Positions 40,801-61,500 of a stretch of 64,000 nt of DNA are shown one piece after another (the first letter of the stretch is position 1; every line of letters starts with the position of its first letter). The position numbers were made by a program, and so were the translations under genes. The notes under the pieces were generated by a model. The model was not told where the DNA came from, searched no databases, and worked only from the letters and a program-made list of their open reading frames with translations. The DNA comes from Fimbriosthenelais zetlandica (lineage: Eukaryota): the NCBI GenBank assembly GCA_977030845.1, contig OZ365114.1:14570001-14634000 (forward strand). Direction: 5' to 3'.

Positions 40801-43330
40801 CAGGGCAATGTCTACATGCAAGTCCTGTCCCAACTTCAAAGCCCCCACACAGCCAACCCCCCATCACAAAGGTCGGGGCATTTGAACCTCTTTGACCCTG
40901 CCTACCCTCATCGAAAGGGTCAGAATGCCCCCACATGGTTTGATATTACTTAATCAATAGATACAATCAGCCGGCGATTGGCAGTGGGAATTTGTGATGG
41001 CCTCATGGGAGGTCGTTCATTGCCGCTTTTTTTATTTGACAGGAAAGTCATTCAAACTGAGCACGCAAGCAGCCACTCAAGCACGTTGCATGAGGCTAAG
41101 CAAAGCTTTGCTGTCTCTGCCAGATGATGCCTTAAAGCAGGGCGGAACACAAGAACTCCACTTTAAGGCCTAAGGGAACAAACTTGCTGATGTATACACA
41201 AGCAGAACTGCTGAAGGCTAGCTAAAAATGTGCCTCTGTCAATGTATAAGGTTGGCAATTCTATTCACTGGCTCACGAAGAGCTTTCTCAGACTTCAAAT
41301 GTATTTCTGCTAAGCTTTTTGAAGGTCTTTTATCATTGCAAGTCTTACTCATATAGAAAACTCCACCGGATCATCAACTTAAGAGTTAATTTGGATTCCA
41401 GTCTACCTAAAAATTGTTACATTCTACGAGGTATAGGCCAGTACAGTTTATATACTAAATTCAGGTTTCAGAGAGGCAGATTTTGGACATTTTAAAATCC
41501 AAAAGGATCTCAATAATCCCAATAATGAAATTGAACGTACATAGAATATTGGCAGATATAAATATATATACATGAGGCCATATTATTTTTCCGTTTGCTC
41601 GACCTCTGCACACGCACAATGCTTATCACAGAGAACGTCCCAATGAATTTGGATTTCCCTTCTGGCAGACTATACATCCGTCTCTTTCGGCTGTGTGGCC
41701 ACTGCTCGCCTGGCTGGTGATCTATCGGAGTGGTCAAGCGGTGTGGGAAGGCCCTGGTCTGTTTTAATCTACTGTCCCCTTGATGCATTGTTAGGGACTG
41801 AAACATAGATAGGACCTAGATCCACAGTCCTGCCTTTAGACTGAGCTTGCTAGGGAGTCTGTTAGGTACCACAGCAATGAGCTGCATACTATAACATATA
41901 TTTAGGCACAGGATATATGGGTGTATATCTAGGTGTCTAAATTGCACTGAGTGAAACCTTAGCCTCTTTTAAAAACAAAGTGAAGACTTTTTGCTTGTGC
42001 AACACTATGACTGTCTAATCACCTACTGAACATTTAGAACTGTTCTTTCAGTTTTTCCCTAAAGCTAATGCATTTAAATAGCTTTTTGGAGCATGTAGCC
42101 ATGGACCAAAACTTTATAAAATACAATTCTTCAGTGCTTTATTCTCTAATGAGTATGTCTTAGAATGTGGATTTTCAAAGTCCATCTCCATTTTTTTCTA
42201 AATATTGGTGAATATAAGTATGTCCTTTACATGGCAATGTGATCTGATAATTGGATAGGGAAGGGCTTGGATTGGATCTGGTACAAGGAAAACTACATAA
42301 ACGATAGACATATATGATAGGTAAATGATGGGGGGAAATCTCGCCTTCTTAGTTTTCCAACCATAGAGTATTCACGGCGCATAATAAAATGGCATTAAAA
42401 GCAGTCCTCCTGAGTGTAACTTGATGCCCACAGTGACCTTCTCCAGGTTTTTGTGCACAAGGAGAGATTGAAGTAGCCCGAGATCCATATTGCAATATTT
42501 GTAGCTTTACATTGCTGAAATGCCAAGCTAAAGTTGGCCCTCAGGCGATTCATCAAACTAGATAGGTCGGTGGGGGAAACTGAAGGTTGTGTCATTCTGA
42601 TTCAGAGATGTAAAACAAGCTGTAATACTATTGTTCTTCTCAGGCAAATAATTTATTATTCCCCAAAGAATCCCATTTAACAATGAGGTCTCGGGGTAGA
42701 GACGTTAGATCTGACGTACATTTTGATTAACTACTTATTTTATTATATGTATAGGCCTAACAATGCCAGTTATACTTCAGCGCATGTAAAATATCTTAAG
42801 ACTTTCTTAATGCACAGTCTACTCCAGTACTTCAAACCTTACATTAGTACTACCCTGGTTCGAGTGCATTGTTTCGGTGCTGGTCTCAGTAGTACGGTCA
42901 TTTCTACCAGAGGACCGTTTTTCACATACACTTCTGGTCAACAAGAGACACAAACCTAATTATGTAGGTGAAGACAGGAGGTGGACTACGTGTGTGTGAC
43001 ATGACTCGTGTTGTTTTCATGGTGCTAATGCTAGTACAGTTCGTGCTGACCATTGTCAGGCGTACATTAACCACATTGTCAATGTGAGAGGAGAGTCAAT
43101 GCTCGCCGCCAGTTGAGCATGATCCTCCAGGGTCTTGTGTCCGAGCCTAGTGCTCGGGTTAGTGACGCCTGAGATCTGACCTTCAAGTTAATTTGATGTA
43201 GGAGAGAGAGACATGGGTGGATGTCCATTTTAATCCTTGTAGATCAGGCATGTGTTAAGAAATGAAATGGACGTTTGGACTTCGCAAAGTCGTCCATTCA
43301 ACCCTGAGGATTTTGTCCCAGAAACTGGCG

Positions 43331-43370
43331 TTAGATTGTGAAAACTATGAGACTGCCATCTGAGAAGACG
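43331..43370 (+). repeat. Left copy of perfect 40-bp direct repeat flanking the array cassette
   Basis: TTAGATTGTGAAAACTATGAGACTGCCATCTGAGAAGACG is identical (40/40) to 43816-43855; the bases on either side differ between the two copies. Confidence 0.96.
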
Positions 43371-43815
43371 AAAGTGAAGTGAAATATGAGGTTCAGTGCT
43401 GATTGGTTGAATCTCACAGAGCGGGACAAATTTGGCGCGGAGACAGTTCAGTTGTGATTGGTTAAATCTCACAGAGCGGGACAAATTTGGCGCGAAGACA
43501 GTTCAGTTGTGATTGGTTGAATCTCACAGAGCGGGAAAAATTTGGCGCGAAGACAGTTCAGTTGTGATTGGTTGAATCTCACAGAGCGGGAGAAATTTCG
43601 CGCGAAGACAGTTCAGTTGTGATTGGTTGAATCTCACAGAGTGGGAACAATTTTCGCGCGGAGACAGTTCACTACTGATTGGCTGGATCTCACAGAGCGG
43701 GACAAATTTCGCGCGGAGACAGTTCAGTGCTGATTCGCTGAATCTCACAGAGCGGGAAAAACTTTCGCCCGGGGACCGGAGGCGCATGCGTAGGCTACTG
43801 TCGCCTTAGGTCGAA
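43371..43815. promoter_or_regulatory. Putative E2F/NF-Y/NRF1 motif-dense promoter/enhancer-like cassette
   Basis: Six of 7 units contain GATTGG (reverse CCAAT box; unit 6 reads AGCCAATCAG on the minus strand). Most units contain GCGGGA(A/C/G)AAA and TTTGGCGC or TTTCGCGC (E2F consensus TTTSSCGC). GCGCATGCG (NRF1-like) lies at 43782-43790. Motif matches only; no function shown. Confidence 0.5.
43391..43777. repeat. Tandem array of seven 55-bp units (one is 56 bp)
   Basis: Units start at 43391, 43446, 43501, 43556, 43611, 43667 and 43722. Consensus is GTTCAGTTGTGATTGGTTGAATCTCACAGAGCGGGACAAATTTGGCGCGAAGACA. ATCTCACAGAG is invariant in all 7 units; the terminal units are the most diverged. Confidence 0.97.
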
Positions 43816-43855
43816 TTAGATTGTGAAAACTATGAGACTGCCATCTGAGAAGACG
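43816..43855 (+). repeat. Right copy of perfect 40-bp direct repeat flanking the array cassette
   Basis: Identical to 43331-43370. Confidence 0.96.
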
Positions 43856-46617
43856 GTACATGCATCTATGATAAGCAATAAGTGTTTGACTACTCAATGG
43901 CAATTGAAGTCAAGATATATCAACATTAGGTTAATTGTCGTTGGAAGCGTTTGTGTGTCTTTCCTGTCTTTCAAGGAAAAAAAGTGTCTTCAAACAAGGC
44001 TCAGGTCATTGTTCTGACAAAGAACATTTCCACGTCAAAATCCTTACATTCAAAAAGTGTCATCCATGAGAGGATCTGACTGAAATGATTGGCAAACCAA
44101 CCAAGAGTTTTTTTTCAAAATGAGTAGTTGAAAAAAGTGAACATAGATCAAATTTCAAATGTCACTAAACTGATCTCAATGATGTGAATATAAAGAGAGA
44201 AGTTTCAAAAAAACGTTCCTGCGTTCCTGGAATAGCACTCTATGAGGACTGGCCAGATGTTTTCTTAATTCTTTTCCTGGGAACCAACATAAGACGCGTC
44301 ATGTTTTTGTAAACCCAATTAAAAGTTGGAAATCCCCAAACTTGCATATTAAAGAGTGTTTGGTTGTTTTTGCATGGGAATTGTTCCTGGCCATAGCTCA
44401 ACGGTCACTTAATTGCTACGCTGGAGACAGTGTCAGCGTAAACTCTGTAATTTTCTCGGCCAGTAACGAATCAATTAACAGTTGCACAGCGGTCATTAGT
44501 TGACACCATCCAATCCAGAGGGCGTTGTCTATCAGCGGCACTGTGCCGTGAGTCCAATTCACAGAATGTGCTGTAGTTTGGATAATGAGGAATGAGGCAT
44601 GATGGGGCTTAAGAAAGGATATCAGGGAACAGGGTAAATAGGCGAAGTGCTAATGAACTAGTCCCCAGTGACGTATTGACCAAGGGGAATACTGTGTACA
44701 ACAATGGACGTACACAGCACAAATCGACACCCCAACTAATCCATATAACCAAAATAACCACAGGAAATCATCCTAAATCCATTTGTGTCAGAGATCTAAA
44801 TTTGACATATGGCATCAGATCTGATGTTATTTGAGTTTATATAATCTTGAGTTGCACGGGTTTGGTGTCATCTATGTAATGTACGTCAGATCTGATATAC
44901 CATTCAACGGTATGGTTTTTGTTTCCAAGGTTTGATAATGTGCCTTTTCTACATCCTTAGTGATGAAGGAGATATTTTCCTGTGATTAACTTGGTTATGA
45001 AATGGCTGTCTAATGCCTCATCTAAAACACATTACGTCCGGGCCTGAGTGGGCAAATCAAATATGCATGGATACTTTGGATGTATGGGCCCTGTCTCTAT
45101 CTCCCTCTAGGGAATTGACTAATGCTGCATTAACAAATATTTTATGTTCAAATTTGTGCACATTGGGCGGCGATTAGTCTTTTATGACCAAAAGAGAAAA
45201 ACAAAGCGCAATTAAAATTGTAATAGTATTTGTGTATACCATATAATTATACAACCTGCTGGAGATGAACATTGCATGAATCTAAATAATATTCTCTTAC
45301 ATCCATAAACACTGGAATTTCATGAGAGACGAAGTATTTCAATAGTATTAAATAGTATTAGTAGAAAAATCAGGGGAGAAAGTCTTATTCATGATATATA
45401 TGAACCTTTCTCGGAAAACACATTTTCCCTGACATAATGGGTTTTATGTAATGCTGACTTCCCTCTATTGTGTATCTCCTTAAGGCTGATCTCTCCTTAC
45501 ATGCATGGGACAGCAATAACGATACGAGGCACTGCATTGAAAGCCACTCCATAAGTAGAGACGTATCTCTTGTGACACTGAGAGGCTCAGGTCCCAAGAT
45601 CAGCGACTCCCCGGGGGGAGGTAAAATGCATTACATTGCGATACAGTTCTTCCGAGTATGAATAGCATTTCAATCCGTTATGGCATATAGATCCGTGATG
45701 CATCCCTGGTATCTTGCCAGCATAATAACCCATTTACACATGGGCCTGCCGGGATGCAATATTAATGTTCCAGAGCAATTCTGAATACAGACTATACTAC
45801 TACTGCCTCCCCACCGTTCGCTTCCACTTAAGTATTTTCCCCAATCGGAACATTGTCATGGAAATAGGATCTAGTGTTCCTTATTAGTTGCTTCCTATGT
45901 ATACAGGGACTTTATACAGGCTTAATATCCGAATGAAATTGTGTAGGCATATATATGTAATAGTGCTGAACTTAAAAACAGATTTTATTTAAGGCAGGGT
46001 TATTATGTTGTTGGATTGTGTTTACAGAATTTAGCATATTCCAATGATTCATCAAAATTGAAATACTTTTACAAGTGTAAAACCCCGGTGAATAAGTATC
46101 CTCCTCGGAGGTTGGCCAGAACAAATCTGATCCGTATGTTTAATGCACATACAGCAAGCTTTTTGAATTTTCACTCACTCTTCACTGCCATGCATTAAAG
46201 GAACAATGTTTTTTTTGTCAAGTCTACCTTGCTATAGAATTATTCCCACAAAAGAGATTTATGATGCCCGCTCACGACTGAAAGAGCAATGGAGCCTCAG
46301 GCACATGTTTATAAAACAAGAGATCCCATAATGCATATATAAGAGATGCCCAGTTGCTACATTATCCAGGCTAATAATACGTGGAACGGATACACATCCG
46401 TATTTGCTCCAGAAATTAATGGGCATGGACAAGAGACCTTGCAAACCATGAGAAAATAGAAAGTATAGCAGCATCTGCCTCATCTTGCTATGGTTTCTCA
46501 TTCAGTATATATGCTGTTCCGGGAAGCCTTATAGAGGGGCCATGCACGCCGGCAGAGGCAATGACAAAACAGAACATGGCGATGTAATTAAGGAAGGAGG
46601 GGGAATGAGGAAGGAAT

Positions 46618-57850: not shown

Positions 57851-58581
57851 GGCAACTTTCAGCATCTGACATCTCCCTCGCCAGAATGTGGCTCCCAACG
57901 CCACCCAATGTTCATGCACATGAATGGGCATAGATCTGTAATCCTAACCCTTCCTGTGTGTTGAGTCATTGGACAAGACGGCTATGAAAAGTCGCAACAA
58001 TTGCAAGTCATGTACATCTGGTGGATATCTCAAATACTTGGTACCTTAATTGGGTACCCACCCGGGGTCATTGCCTTGTGATTCTTGCAGTGATTCTTGC
58101 AAGAGGAGCTTGTCCACAAGACCATCAACTGCAAGTGCATCAATTGCTTCCAGGAAATGGTACATTACAGGAATCGGAAGGCAACAATTAGCAATTGATA
58201 TCTCCCTCGACAGAATGTAGACCCCCATGCACCCAGTCCTTGTAGGTGACCGATATCTGTAGCGCCAGTCCCTTCCTTTGGAGGATATCGGTATGAAAGT
58301 TTGCAAGAATTGCAAGTCAAGTATAAGTAGTGGATATCTCAAATGACCTGGTACCTTAATTGGGTACCTACCCGGGGTCATTGCAAGAGGAGCTTGTCTA
58401 CAAGACCATCAACTGCAAGTGCATCAATATTGCTTCTTTGCAAGAATTGCAAGTCAAGTAAATCTAGTGGATATCTCAAATGACCTGGCAGACTAATTGG
58501 GTGCCTACCAGGGATCATTGCCTAGTGATTCTTGCAGTGATGCTTGGTAGTGTAGTTTATCTACAAGACCATCAACTGCAA
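57851..58581. repeat. Degenerate tandem repeat, ~329-bp period (copy A ~57851-58179, copy B ~58180-58437, partial copy C ~58438-58581)
   Basis: Shared blocks TTGCAAGTCA..GTGGATATCTCAAAT, GGTACCTTAATTGGGTACC, CCCGGGGTCATTGC and ACAAGACCATCAACTGCAA (the middle two are degenerate in copy C). The 5' parts of A and B also align (ATCTCCCTCG.CAGAATGT at ~57871 and ~58200). Confidence 0.9.
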
Positions 58582-61500
58582 ATACTAGTACCAATACTGA
58601 CATACATTTGTATAATGATGCTAGATTAGTAACGAAATAAAATTGTCAGATTGTGGGGGGTGACTCATACCCTACGTCACCCACCCCGGCTACGGGCCTG
58701 GCCTATATCAGGAAGACTTTTACAGAAAGGACTTGTGCTGAACTAGCAATATGGGGGTATTTTCTGTATCCTTTTTCCCTGCACATCTTCCTGGCCTTTC
58801 AACCTAAATCAATAAATGCCGAAAAGTGAAAAATGGCACAATACAAAACGTCAGTGATAGTGAATCCCCTACAGGTTTACCACAGTGTAAGTAAAGCTAA
58901 GGAAGTGTGAGAACTGCTGCCAGCCCCAGGGAAAGGAAAGATTGACACAGAGTAATTGTTTAATCAAAGAGAACACCTCAGTGCTAGCTCATAGATACGT
59001 TGGATCGAAATATTCTTTTAAAATGTTGGCATATTTTGACAGGAAAACATGCCATTCTACAAGTTTATGAAATCTGATTATATCAAGCCGAATATTATGC
59101 CAAAAGTAACCTACAATGCACATATATACTAGCGATAATTTTTAGAAAGTTTTTAGAATTTTTGTTTGCAAGTGTCTCAAAATTGTCATTGTTAAAATGT
59201 TAAACATACGATATTATACATTAAATAATATTATACAAGTTTTCATCTTCACCATGCTGTCCAACAATACAGTACGTGAAGCATTGATATTCAGAGGATG
59301 ATGTAAGAAGGGCTCGACCGTGGTTTATGCAAATGAAGCCCAGGAAAGAACTACCGAGGCCCTAGAAAGCTGGACAGGAACACGGCTATCGTAGGACTCG
59401 TGGAGAAAGTATTTGGATTAGTGCCAACTTGGAATAGAAGGCAATTTGTAAGGATATCACCCCCTTCTGTCTAAGTCATTGTTCATCTTAAAGTTCTCGC
59501 TATTTAACTGTACATATAATGATGAGGCGCTTTAAGTACGAGCGCCTGCTTCTTTATACTCGCTTGAATGTTCACATTCACACAGTCACCAAAGAAAAAA
59601 ACAATGCTTTATTTCTTGATTTACTCGTAAATGTCACTGACCATCTGTCTCTCTTCCCACATGGATGAAAACGAACTGAAATATGCAGAGGATGAAAAAA
59701 GACAGATATTGATGAAAGAAAGATGGATGCAAACAACAACCAAAAACGAAAGAAAATATATTTGTTTCCATACATTTTCTCTGCAATAATACTTTTGACA
59801 GAAAATCATAACCAGGGTTTTCTGAATCTCCTATTTTCGAGGCAGTAATGAGAATATGTATATATATGGGCGATAATTTTCGATGCAGGGGATGTGGTCT
59901 CACATCTGTGTATCATTACAAAGGCTTCTTAGGTGATGGTTAAAGAGGCTTTAGTGGAGGATGTATTGCCTGGCTGCCTGAAGGTGGATATATGCAAGGC
60001 TGAAGTGACATCCCTGTGGGAATCCATGGTCCTTCATCATTTCTCCTTGACAGCAGGGGAGGGGAATCCCTCTGCTTCTGTCTTGGAGGGCTCTCAGGAA
60101 AGACTCTGAGACATATTAACAGGATTAAACCGGCTATTAACGATGCCCGGAAGGATGGGTTTTTTTTCACCCTCAGCGAGGTCTCAAGTAGCTTGTGCAT
60201 ACCTCGGAAATATTGTCATGTACTAGTCATGAGTATGGTGCTACATTGAATACTTCTACTTTTGGTCATGGATAGTTGTTTTCCGATTCTGACACATATA
60301 TTAATATTATGCCTGAGTGTTGGCATATAATATTATAGATACATAATCCTCATCCAAGCAAAATTGTGGCTAATATTATTATACAAATGTAAGGTTAGAA
60401 TGCTTATACTCCAACGAGCTAGTGGAAGCCCATCATTTCACCTCCAAATGAGTGCCATTTTCAAATACATCAGGGTGAATCATGCATACATCAAGCTTGA
60501 GTACAAATAACAACTCTGCTTCCATATCGTGGCTTATTTCATAAGCAAACACAATGGTCTAAAGGTCAGGAGAGTTTCGCCAATAGAAGAGTGATTTTTC
60601 ACCCAATGTACGAAGATGGGACAGATTTGAAGTATGCCTTGAAAGTATGGAAAGTTAAGAGAGAATTATGAGAGTCTTATGTCAGCTTAGAAGATGATGG
60701 ATGTCCTCGGCTCAGTCAGGCAAAAGAAGAGCCTGCTAATCAGATTGCTTTAGGCAAAGTTAGATGAAAACAGGCCGCGTGGAATGATACTGTTTGAAAG
60801 TTATGGGGTTCGTAAATACTCGCATGTCACTGTTTGTGATGTGGCGTGGGAGGAGTTGCCTATGCACAATTCATGGAAACAACTATTTTATTAGTTGCCA
60901 AATAAAAACCAAATAGTTTGGATATGCATGCACGTGTGGAGTTGGTATCGGATGAATATTTCAACTTCTAGAGGCACAAATCCAAGATACCGGTGCTGCA
61001 GTCAGTTATTTATTCAGTCTAGATACCCCTCCTAGACCGAAGAGGGTAAAAAAAACTGCAGATCAACAGATAACCACATGCGACCTCTGTCTGAGAAGGG
61101 CACAGTATTCACTATAGGCTGGCTAAAACTTATTATCACTGGTGACAATGCTGATTCTCGTCCAGGACAATGGTACGGACAGCTGTTGTATGTTGCCGGA
61201 CCTAAAGTAATAAGCCCATCTACGCTTCCGAAATAAATGCAAAAGATCGAATTACGAGACGTCTTACATGATCAACCTCCTCATTAAAGACATTGCATCA
61301 GAAAAGATTTCCTTGTATTTTTACACCAAGTTTGTTGCAGGAAAAAACACCCACTTAAGATTTCTACTGAATTCACAAATATTGAGTGGACAATGTTATA
61401 TCCTGGTAGAATCTAACTAGATGGTGGTACTGAGGTGCGGATAGTATTGAAGGCCCACTCGCTGTGCTCATGAGATCCAGCAGAAAAAAAACCATCTCGA

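What the first reader, a model, noticed from the sequence alone, without database searches (positions are those of the whole stretch)
43331..43855. 445-bp cassette bracketed by a perfect 40-bp direct repeat: a recent insertion, or a potentially excisable unit
Seen: a 40/40 identical direct repeat (43331-43370 and 43816-43855) encloses a CpG-rich 445-bp segment whose composition differs from the flanks. The older elements in this window are heavily decayed, and even the internal 55-bp units differ from each other, so the flanking duplication appears younger than its cargo. I found no terminal inverted repeats, no TG..CA LTR ends, no poly(A) tail and no coding capacity. Established: typical TSDs are much shorter (DNA transposons ~2-10 bp, LTR elements 4-6 bp, LINEs mostly under ~20 bp). 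Inference, three options: (a) Campbell-type integration of a small circle through a 40-bp shared core; (b) capture of a templated fragment at a widely staggered break; (c) an unusual non-autonomous element with long direct termini. Recombination between the repeats would loop out a 485-bp circle and restore an empty site reading ...CTGGCG-[40 bp]-GTACAT....
Basis: partly seen in the sequence, partly recalled or inferred. Interest (0 to 1): 0.72.

Follow-up and report, generated by a model that had tools for sequence, protein, structure and literature searches.

The report
Copied DNA patch with 40-bp flanks
A 445-letter piece of a promoter-like repeat array was copied from a related site 4.3 million letters away on the same chromosome and pasted into unique DNA, duplicating 40 letters of the target; this looks like a scar of DNA break repair or replication template switching, a known kind of event, not a jumping gene.

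Summary
The 40-mer at 43331-43370 equals 43816-43855 (40/40). These are its only two occurrences in the 447-Mb assembly. It encloses a 445-bp CpG-rich segment: a 20-bp head, seven 55/56-bp units and a 39-bp tail.

The segment is not a mobile element with its own ends. It has five relatives, all on the same chromosome (17.05-19.06 Mb).
- All five continue upstream with shared sequence that the window copy lacks.
- The window copy's 3' end matches only the 18.90-Mb relative. It crosses that locus's private junction between the array tail and a truncated high-copy repeat, taking 7-11 bp of the repeat.
- None of the five relatives has flanking direct repeats.
- Junction microhomology is 1 bp (G) and 4 bp (TTAG).

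So the cassette is a templated copy of an arbitrary fragment of the 18.90-Mb lineage, placed in single-copy DNA with a 40-bp target duplication. This fits a widely staggered break filled in and patched, or a replication template switch that returned 40 nt behind its departure point.

No sequencing runs were listed, so an empty allele, excision and assembly error could not be tested. This is a known kind of event and of modest interest.

The parts
43331..43370 (+). Left copy of the 40-bp target-site duplication. This is native single-copy target sequence. Its last base, G, is shared with the donor (1-bp junction microhomology).
   Evidence: The donor reads ...GAGTTG|AAAGTG.
43371..43390 (+). 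Head of the copied fragment: 20 bp that precede the first array unit in every family member. In the five other copies this head is preceded by conserved sequence (CATCCCCAGGGAGTTG) that is absent here.
43391..43776 (+). Seven tandem units (55,55,55,55,56,55,55 nt). Six of the seven carry an inverted CCAAT box (GATTGG) and an E2F-like TTTSSCGC site; unit 7 has neither. The unit layout is the same as in the 18.46-Mb relative.
43777..43804 (+). Array-family tail, containing GCGCATGCG. It carries two changes shared only with the 18.90-Mb copy: GACCGG, and loss of a G in GGC(G)TAC.
43805..43815 (+). CTTA plus GGTCGAA. This is the private junction of the 18.90-Mb locus plus the first 7 nt of the truncated high-copy repeat that follows the array there. 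It is the donor fingerprint.
43816..43855 (+). Right copy of the 40-bp target-site duplication. Its first 4 nt, TTAG, are also the next 4 nt of the donor (4-bp junction microhomology).

Best explanation
The cassette is a templated, copy-and-paste insertion and not a transposition.

Source and target. A roughly 445-nt stretch was copied from a paralogous locus on the same chromosome. That locus was the ancestor of the copy now at C21:18,903,531-18,903,758, 4.29 Mb away and in the same orientation. The copy was placed in single-copy DNA. The donor stayed in place.

Extent of the copy. It starts at an arbitrary point 20 nt before the donor's array. It ends 7-11 nt inside a truncated interspersed repeat that abuts the array only at that donor.

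Origin of the 40-bp duplication. The two strands of the target were broken or left 40 nt apart. There are two ways this could happen. (i) Two nicks 40 nt apart on opposite strands gave a break with long overhangs; both were filled in, and the copied patch was joined between them. (ii) A nascent strand that had already copied the 40-mer switched to the donor, copied 445 nt, and switched back through the TTAG microhomology 40 nt behind where it had left.

Later change at the donor. The donor array afterwards shrank from 7 to 3 units by unequal exchange. The window therefore preserves the donor's older state.

What is shown: the repeat, its uniqueness, the donor lineage, the direction of copying, the non-element boundaries and the microhomologies.

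What is inferred: the break geometry, a DNA rather than RNA template, and the order of events.

The stated confidence is for the whole statement, including a DNA template. That it is a templated copy from the 18.90-Mb lineage, by whatever template, I put at about 0.9.
For: 1. The 40-mer is unique to this site, and both flanks are single copy.

2. The insert has exactly five relatives, all on C21. The chance that five further loci all fall on a chromosome holding 7.2% of the genome is about 2e-6.

3. Homology to the relatives starts exactly at 43370/43371 and ends at 43804-43819. All five relatives carry conserved sequence upstream of that start that the window lacks.

4. Three derived characters are shared only with the 18.90-Mb copy. 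One of them is the tail CTTA+GGTCGAATTAG.

5. At 18.90 Mb, GGTCGAATTAGGCC... begins a 1.2-kb stretch of a repeat with at least 230 genomic candidates. That repeat's other copies continue further upstream, so this junction is a one-off. The window carries only the first 7-11 nt of it, which fixes the direction as donor to window.

6. Junction microhomology is G at the 5' junction and TTAG at the 3' junction. Four or more bp at one junction is expected by chance at 0.4%.

7. No other copy has flanking direct repeats of 9 bp or more.

8. The window and the 18.46-Mb copy share the layout of 7 units with a 56-nt fifth unit. Unit 3 of the 18.90-Mb copy is the first 40 nt of window unit 3 joined to the last 15 nt of window unit 7. 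The length difference is exactly four units, 221 nt.

9. There are 3 differences in 138 orthologous bp, or 2.2%. This makes a perfect 40-mer pair unsurprising, with P = 0.42.

10. Precedents. Captured mitochondrial patches carry target duplications of 1-11 nt in 24% of cases, read as cohesive overhangs (PMC2567098). Breaks with long complementary 3' overhangs are filled in and give duplications that span almost the whole overhang (PMC8355091). Template-switch insertions show 0-6 bp of microhomology (PMC5120786).
Against: No empty allele, orthologous empty site or read support could be obtained, because no sequencing run was listed. The present donor has 3 units, not 7, so the 7-unit donor state is reconstructed, not observed. 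The true donor could also be a lost or unassembled paralog of the same lineage. A 40-bp target duplication is longer than the 1-11 nt seen around captured mitochondrial fragments. The 5' junction has only 1 bp of microhomology, which is no better than chance. The sequence alone cannot separate a DNA template from an RNA template, nor break repair from replicative switching.
Confidence: 0.72

Rival explanations
1. RNA-templated insertion. A transcript running through the donor array into the adjacent repeat was reverse-transcribed at a nick by a LINE enzyme acting in trans (target-primed reverse transcription). Priming was internal on UUAG, the copy was 5'-truncated, and a second nick 40 nt away produced the 40-bp target-site duplication.
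For: The geometry fits equally well. The 4-bp microhomology lies exactly where a bottom-strand primer would anneal: at the 3' end of the insert, against the start of the right-hand duplication. The 5' junction, with 0-1 bp of microhomology, and the missing upstream part resemble 5' truncation. Human class 1 templated sequence insertions carry target duplications and are attributed to LINE-1 ORF2 acting on foreign RNA (PMC5110952).
Against: There is no poly(A), no polyadenylation signal and no microsatellite tail. The nick site would read CTAA/CG on the bottom strand, not TTTT/A. The copied stretch is a promoter-like array, which is normally upstream of transcription starts. No RNA run could be listed to show a transcript. 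The class 1 features defined in PMC5110952 are therefore met only for the duplication.
Confidence: 0.15
2. A non-autonomous mobile element whose insertion makes unusually long (40-bp) target-site duplications, or whose termini are long direct repeats.
For: The unit is repeated six times in the genome. This copy is bracketed by a perfect direct repeat.
Against: The 40-mer is not part of any other copy. No other copy has a flanking duplication. The cassette's 5' end falls inside sequence that is continuous in all other copies, and its 3' end falls inside a different repeat. There are no terminal inverted repeats. All copies lie within 4.5 Mb of one chromosome. Four of the relatives are old segmental duplicates sharing flanks, not independent insertions.
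Confidence: 0.03
3. Campbell-type integration of a small circle through a shared 40-bp core (att-like site). The cassette would then be excisable by recombination between the two cores.
For: The layout core-insert-core is what such an integration leaves. Recombination between 40-bp repeats would restore the empty site.
Against: The core is absent from every donor-family locus and from the rest of the genome. The insert is colinear with the chromosomal donor from head to tail, where a circle opened at a core would be permuted. No recombinase-like ORF lies nearby.
Confidence: 0.02
4. Assembly artefact: a chimeric read or a mis-join placed array sequence between two copies of a collapsed or duplicated 40-mer.
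For: No reads could be laid on the locus, so this is not excluded directly.
Against: The insert is not identical to any assembled locus. It is at best 96% identical over part of its length and has 7 units against 3, so it cannot be misplaced sequence from another assembled site. The junctions show the microhomology and exact target duplication typical of biological events.
Confidence: 0.04

Closest known systems
Templated sequence insertions / 'patch' repair of double-strand breaks (human TSIP class 2; filler DNA; captured mitochondrial fragments)
   Same: A few hundred bp are copied from a distant site that stays intact. The boundaries of the copied stretch are arbitrary. Junctions have 0-4 bp of microhomology. 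There is no poly(A) and there are no element termini. Captured mitochondrial patches also carry target duplications, which are read as filled-in cohesive ends (PMC5110952; PMC2567098).
   Different: Class 2 TSIPs are defined as lacking target duplications. Duplications around mitochondrial patches are 1-11 nt, against 40 nt here. The donor here is a paralogous array in cis, 4.3 Mb away.
Small tandem duplications from breaks with long complementary overhangs (paired nicks on opposite strands, fill-in, end joining)
   Same: The duplicated length equals the stagger between the two nicks. Fill-in starting near the 3' tip gives duplications that span almost the entire overhang (PMC8355091). The natural-insertion model of Vaughn and Bennetzen 2014 is known to me only as reference 14 of that paper.
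   Different: In that model the two filled ends are joined directly. Here a 445-bp templated patch sits between them.
Replicative template switching (FoSTeS/MMBIR) insertions
   Same: There are two switches, with 1 and 4 bp of microhomology. The donor is in cis and is retained. Returning behind the departure point duplicates the flank. 0-6 bp of homology at junctions is accepted for this mechanism (PMC5120786).
   Different: The described constitutional cases are kb to Mb in size and are often complex, with several switches. Here only a single simple insertion is seen.
LINE-mediated trans insertions (TSIP class 1 / processed retrocopies)
   Same: A target-site duplication flanks a copy of non-element sequence, with apparent 5' truncation.
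   Different: There is no poly(A), no polyadenylation signal and no TTTT/A target site.

Membership tests
Cut-and-paste DNA transposon / MITE | Terminal inverted repeats at the element ends | tested here: not met
   No inverted repeat joins 43371... to ...43815.
Cut-and-paste DNA transposon / MITE | Several copies with the same two termini, each flanked by its own short target duplication | tested here: not met
   The five other copies extend beyond the cassette's 5' end. Apart from the 18.90-Mb donor-lineage copy, which runs on into the adjoining repeat, they end differently at the 3' side. None has a flanking repeat of 9 bp or more.
LINE-mediated insertion (TSIP class 1) | Target-site duplication of at least 5 bp | tested here: met
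   A 40-bp perfect duplication is present.
LINE-mediated insertion (TSIP class 1) | Poly(A) tract 10-30 nt after a polyadenylation signal | tested here: not met
   The insert ends ...GGTCGAA|TTAG. There is no A-run and no AATAAA. The criteria are from PMC5110952.
LINE-mediated insertion (TSIP class 1) | Insertion at a TTTT/A-type endonuclease site | tested here: not met
   The target reads CTGGCG|TTAG, which is CTAA/CG on the bottom strand. This criterion is human LINE-1 specific; the preference of this genome's LINEs is unknown.
Site-specific (att x att, Campbell) integration | The core sequence is shared by the target and the incoming molecule or donor | tested here: not met
   The 40-mer has only the two hits at this locus in 447 Mb, allowing up to 3 mismatches.
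Site-specific (att x att, Campbell) integration | A recombinase is encoded on or beside the element | tested here: not met
   The 445-bp insert has only two repeat-derived ORFs without a Pfam hit. No long ORF lies nearby.
Templated patch insertion (break repair or template switching) | A donor locus is identifiable elsewhere and still present | tested here: met
   The 18.90-Mb copy shares three private characters, including the array|repeat junction.
Templated patch insertion (break repair or template switching) | The insert boundaries are arbitrary with respect to repeat or element boundaries | tested here: met
   The 5' end lies inside sequence conserved across the family. The 3' end lies 7-11 nt into a different, truncated repeat.
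Templated patch insertion (break repair or template switching) | Microhomology or blunt joins at both junctions | tested here: met
   There is 1 bp (G) at the 5' junction and 4 bp (TTAG) at the 3' junction.
Templated patch insertion (break repair or template switching) | An empty pre-insertion site exists in other individuals or species | not testable with these tools
   No sequencing run was listed. The assembly holds no alternative haplotig with the 40-mer. No related eukaryotic genomes are reachable.

The most novel reading that the evidence does not exclude
The patch may have seeded a working regulatory module at a new site: promoter or enhancer birth by break repair. The copied array still has a CpG-island-like composition, with CpG o/e of 1.15 against about 0.5 around it. 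Six of its seven units keep a CCAAT box plus an E2F-like site. The private C-to-G changes in units 1-3 turn TTTCGCGC into TTTGGCGC, which is still within the E2F-type consensus. In addition, the perfect 40-bp repeats could make the module reversible through deletion by single-strand annealing or slippage, giving a presence/absence regulatory polymorphism.
Probability: 0.12. Interest if true: 0.6.

Novelty: new member of a known kind. Interest (0 to 1): 0.3.

Why it matters
This is a cleanly resolved natural example of a templated insertion. The donor lineage, the direction of copying, both junctions and the break stagger can all be read from one assembly.

Two points are of some use.
- The 40-nt target duplication is several times longer than the 1-11 nt overhangs inferred from captured mitochondrial fragments. 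If the staggered-break reading is right, germline breaks with long overhangs can be patched without loss of sequence.
- The cargo is a CpG-rich, promoter-like CCAAT/E2F array, so the event shows a route, other than transposition, by which regulatory modules can be moved.

It also warns annotators that 'direct repeat - cargo - direct repeat' need not be a mobile or excisable element.

Tried and rejected
1. Read-level checks (assembly error, empty allele, circle junction). The look-up of sequencing runs listed no run for 42600-44600 (kind dna) or for 43150-44050 (kind any).

2. Looking for more family members. Relaxed searches with the unit core, the consensus tail and the head junction found only the same six loci.

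3. Looking for paralogous empty sites. The flanks of the window site are single copy, so no empty paralog exists.

4. Testing whether the array is a recurrent donor with several independent patch copies. The 18.46-Mb copy turned out to share patchy upstream homology with the 17.05-Mb copy, so it belongs to the old segmental duplicates. Only the 19.06-Mb copy is isolated, with unique flanks beyond -32/+62, and it has no target duplication. The idea is not supported beyond the window copy.

5. Whether the upstream flank of the 18.90-Mb copy is the missing upstream part of the high-copy repeat, which would mean the array had inserted into that repeat. Only a 34-bp internal match was found, so this was rejected.

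6. Coding or RNA function. There were no Pfam, Rfam or tRNA hits.

7. Gene context of the window. No convincing coding ORF lies within about 13 kb. The large protein databases were not spent on this.

8. Vaughn and Bennetzen 2014 could not be read. It is cited only as reference 14 of PMC8355091.

Full report
**1. Observation**

The repeat is as described. 43331-43370 and 43816-43855 are identical over 40 nt, 485 nt apart, and the identity stops sharply at both ends.
- Shuffled sequence never gives such a pair.
- No other flanking repeat of this kind exists in the 64-kb window.
- Allowing up to 3 mismatches, the 40-mer has only these two occurrences in the whole 447-Mb assembly. The window is C21:14,570,001-14,634,000.

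The enclosed 445 nt consist of three parts:
- a 20-nt head;
- seven tandem units with lengths 55,55,55,55,56,55,55;
- a 39-nt tail.

CpG observed/expected is 1.15 inside, against 0.49-0.56 in the flanks. There are no terminal inverted repeats, no poly(A), no Rfam, tRNA or Pfam signal. Both flanks are single copy.

**2. What the insert is related to**

The 445 nt have exactly five relatives, all on the same 32-Mb chromosome: at 17.05, 17.88 (minus strand), 18.46, 18.90 and 19.06 Mb. They carry 4, about 2, 7, 3 and 4 units respectively. Relaxed searches with the unit core, the tail and the head junction found no others. Five further loci all falling on a chromosome that is 7.2% of the genome has a chance probability of about 2e-6. 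The family therefore spreads locally, not by free transposition. Four of the relatives are old duplicates, 80-90% identical, that share extra flanking sequence.

**3. The cassette ends are not element ends**

Homology between the window and the relatives begins exactly at 43370/43371 and ends between 43804 and 43819.

*5' side.* All five relatives continue upstream with a conserved stretch ending in CATCCCCAGGGAGTTG. Three of them continue for about 200 nt. The window has the 40-mer there instead.

*3' side.* The window tail matches only the 18.90-Mb copy. The two share GACCGG (the others have GACAGG), loss of a G in GGC(G)TAC, and the sequence CTTA-GGTCGAATTAG after TACTGTCGC. The other copies read GGCACGTGACGTCAG-like sequence at that point.

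At 18.90 Mb, GGTCGAATTAGGCC... is the start of a 1.2-kb fragment of an interspersed repeat with at least 230 candidate copies. The consensus of that repeat reads GGTAGAAATAGGCCCAGATAT, and its other copies continue further upstream with their own conserved sequence. The array|repeat junction at 18.90 Mb is therefore a one-off rearrangement.

The window cassette carries this junction and the first 7-11 nt of the repeat, and then stops. This fixes both the donor lineage and the direction of copying: from 18.90 Mb into the window, and not the reverse.

**4. Junctions**

- 5' junction: the target reads ...GAAGACG and the donor reads ...GAGTTG|AAAGTG. They share 1 nt, G, which is no better than chance.
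- 3' junction: the donor reads ...GGTCGAA-TTAG-GCC and the target reads CTGGCG-TTAG-ATTG. They share 4 nt, TTAG, exactly at the start of the duplicated 40-mer. Four or more nt is expected by chance in 0.4% of junctions.

None of the five relatives has flanking direct repeats of 9 nt or more.

**5. History of the array**

The window and the 18.46-Mb copy have the same seven-unit layout, with a 56-nt fifth unit and a GTTCACT-type sixth unit. Seven units is therefore the older state.

The 18.90-Mb copy now has three units. Its third unit is the first 40 nt of window unit 3 fused to the last 15 nt of window unit 7, with one mismatch. The length difference is exactly 221 nt, which is four units including the 56-nt one. 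An unequal exchange at the donor after the copy was made is the simplest reading. The window preserves the donor's earlier form.

Over 138 nt that are unambiguously orthologous (head, unit 1 and tail), the window and the donor differ at 3 positions, or 2.2%. At that divergence the two 40-mers would be expected to differ at 0.87 positions, and they remain identical with probability 0.42.

The inferred order of events is:
1. old segmental duplications;
2. the private junction forming at 18.90 Mb;
3. the copy into the window;
4. contraction of the donor array.

**6. Mechanism**

The product, target40 - copied fragment - target40 with an intact donor and microhomology, is what two known routes give.

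*Route (i): staggered break and patch.* Two single-strand breaks 40 nt apart on opposite strands open a break with complementary overhangs. Both overhangs are filled in, and a copied patch ends up between them.
- Filled-in overhangs are the accepted reading of the 1-11-nt target duplications around 24% of captured mitochondrial fragments in primates (PMC2567098).
- Experimentally, breaks with long 3' overhangs give duplications spanning almost the whole overhang (PMC8355091).
- In a synthesis-dependent version, the 3' end ...GACG primes on the donor and the new end ...TTAG anneals to the tip of the other overhang.

*Route (ii): replicative template switching (FoSTeS/MMBIR).* There would be two switches, the second landing on TTAG 40 nt behind the point of departure. 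Junction homologies of 0-6 nt are accepted for this route (PMC5120786).

The sequence cannot tell the two routes apart. I treat them together as the best explanation.

*Main rival: an RNA-templated version.* This would be target-primed reverse transcription by a LINE enzyme in trans, priming internally on UUAG, with a second nick 40 nt away. It predicts the same geometry. However, it lacks the poly(A), the polyadenylation signal and the TTTT/A site that define the human class 1 events (PMC5110952). It also needs a transcript through a promoter-like array. I give it about 0.15.

**7. Rejected readings**

- *Transposon with long target duplications or direct termini.* The ends are not element ends, no other copy has a duplication, there are no inverted termini, and the family is confined to 4.5 Mb.
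- *Campbell integration through a 40-nt core.* The core is absent from every possible donor. The insert is colinear with the donor, not permuted.
- *Assembly artefact.* The insert is not identical to any assembled locus, and the junctions look biological. This could not be checked with reads, because none were listed.

**8. Excisability and function**

Any 40-nt perfect direct repeat can in principle support deletion by single-strand annealing or slippage. That would restore CTGGCG-[40]-GTACAT. Nothing here shows that it happens.

The cargo is promoter-like. Six of the seven units have an inverted CCAAT box and a TTTSSCGC site, and the tail has GCGCATGCG. The donor-family element CACGTGACGTCA downstream of the tail had already been lost in the donor lineage and was not copied. 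Whether the array is active at its new site is unknown.

**9. Verdict**

The event belongs to a known kind, a templated patch insertion. It is unusual only in the length of the target duplication and in how fully its history can be read. Interest is modest.

Noticed in passing
window 42707-42722 (+) and 44878-44893 (-): A perfect 16-nt inverted pair, AGATCTGACGTACATT. These are the only two occurrences in the 447-Mb genome. They bracket 2.2 kb of otherwise single-copy DNA that contains the cassette. No target duplication is seen, and there is no further similarity inward. Possible readings are a relic terminal-repeat pair, a second small inverted templated patch from the same repair episode, or chance (roughly 1e-3 for this span).
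   Followed up: partly
L007:1718-2890 (C21:18,903,748-18,904,920) and loci L044-L053: A high-copy interspersed repeat of about 1.2 kb, with at least 230 candidate copies on many chromosomes, rich in TAGGCCTA. Other readers flagged the same 8-mer elsewhere in this genome. Fragments of it follow the array in the 17.05-, 17.88- and 18.90-Mb copies, each joined at a different internal position. This suggests independent deletions after a segmental duplication.
   Followed up: partly
L005:1452-1790 (C21:19,063,203-19,063,541): An isolated 4-unit copy of the array family with unique flanks and no flanking direct repeat. It keeps the fullest tail (GCGCATGCG, CACGTGACGTCA). It may be another patch-type copy or the oldest locus. 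No gene was recognised just downstream.
   Followed up: partly
window 43391-43555: Units 1-3 of the window array share a private C-to-G change (TTTCGCGCG to TTTGGCGCG) seen in no other locus. This points to homogenisation within the array (conversion or slippage) after or just before the copy. The change stays within the E2F-type consensus.
   Followed up: no
window 57991-58591: A local cluster of 85-nt and 48-nt direct repeats, three copies each, 62-98% identical to the reference copy, spaced 137-309 nt apart. It looks like a short tandem or segmental repeat and was not examined.
   Followed up: no
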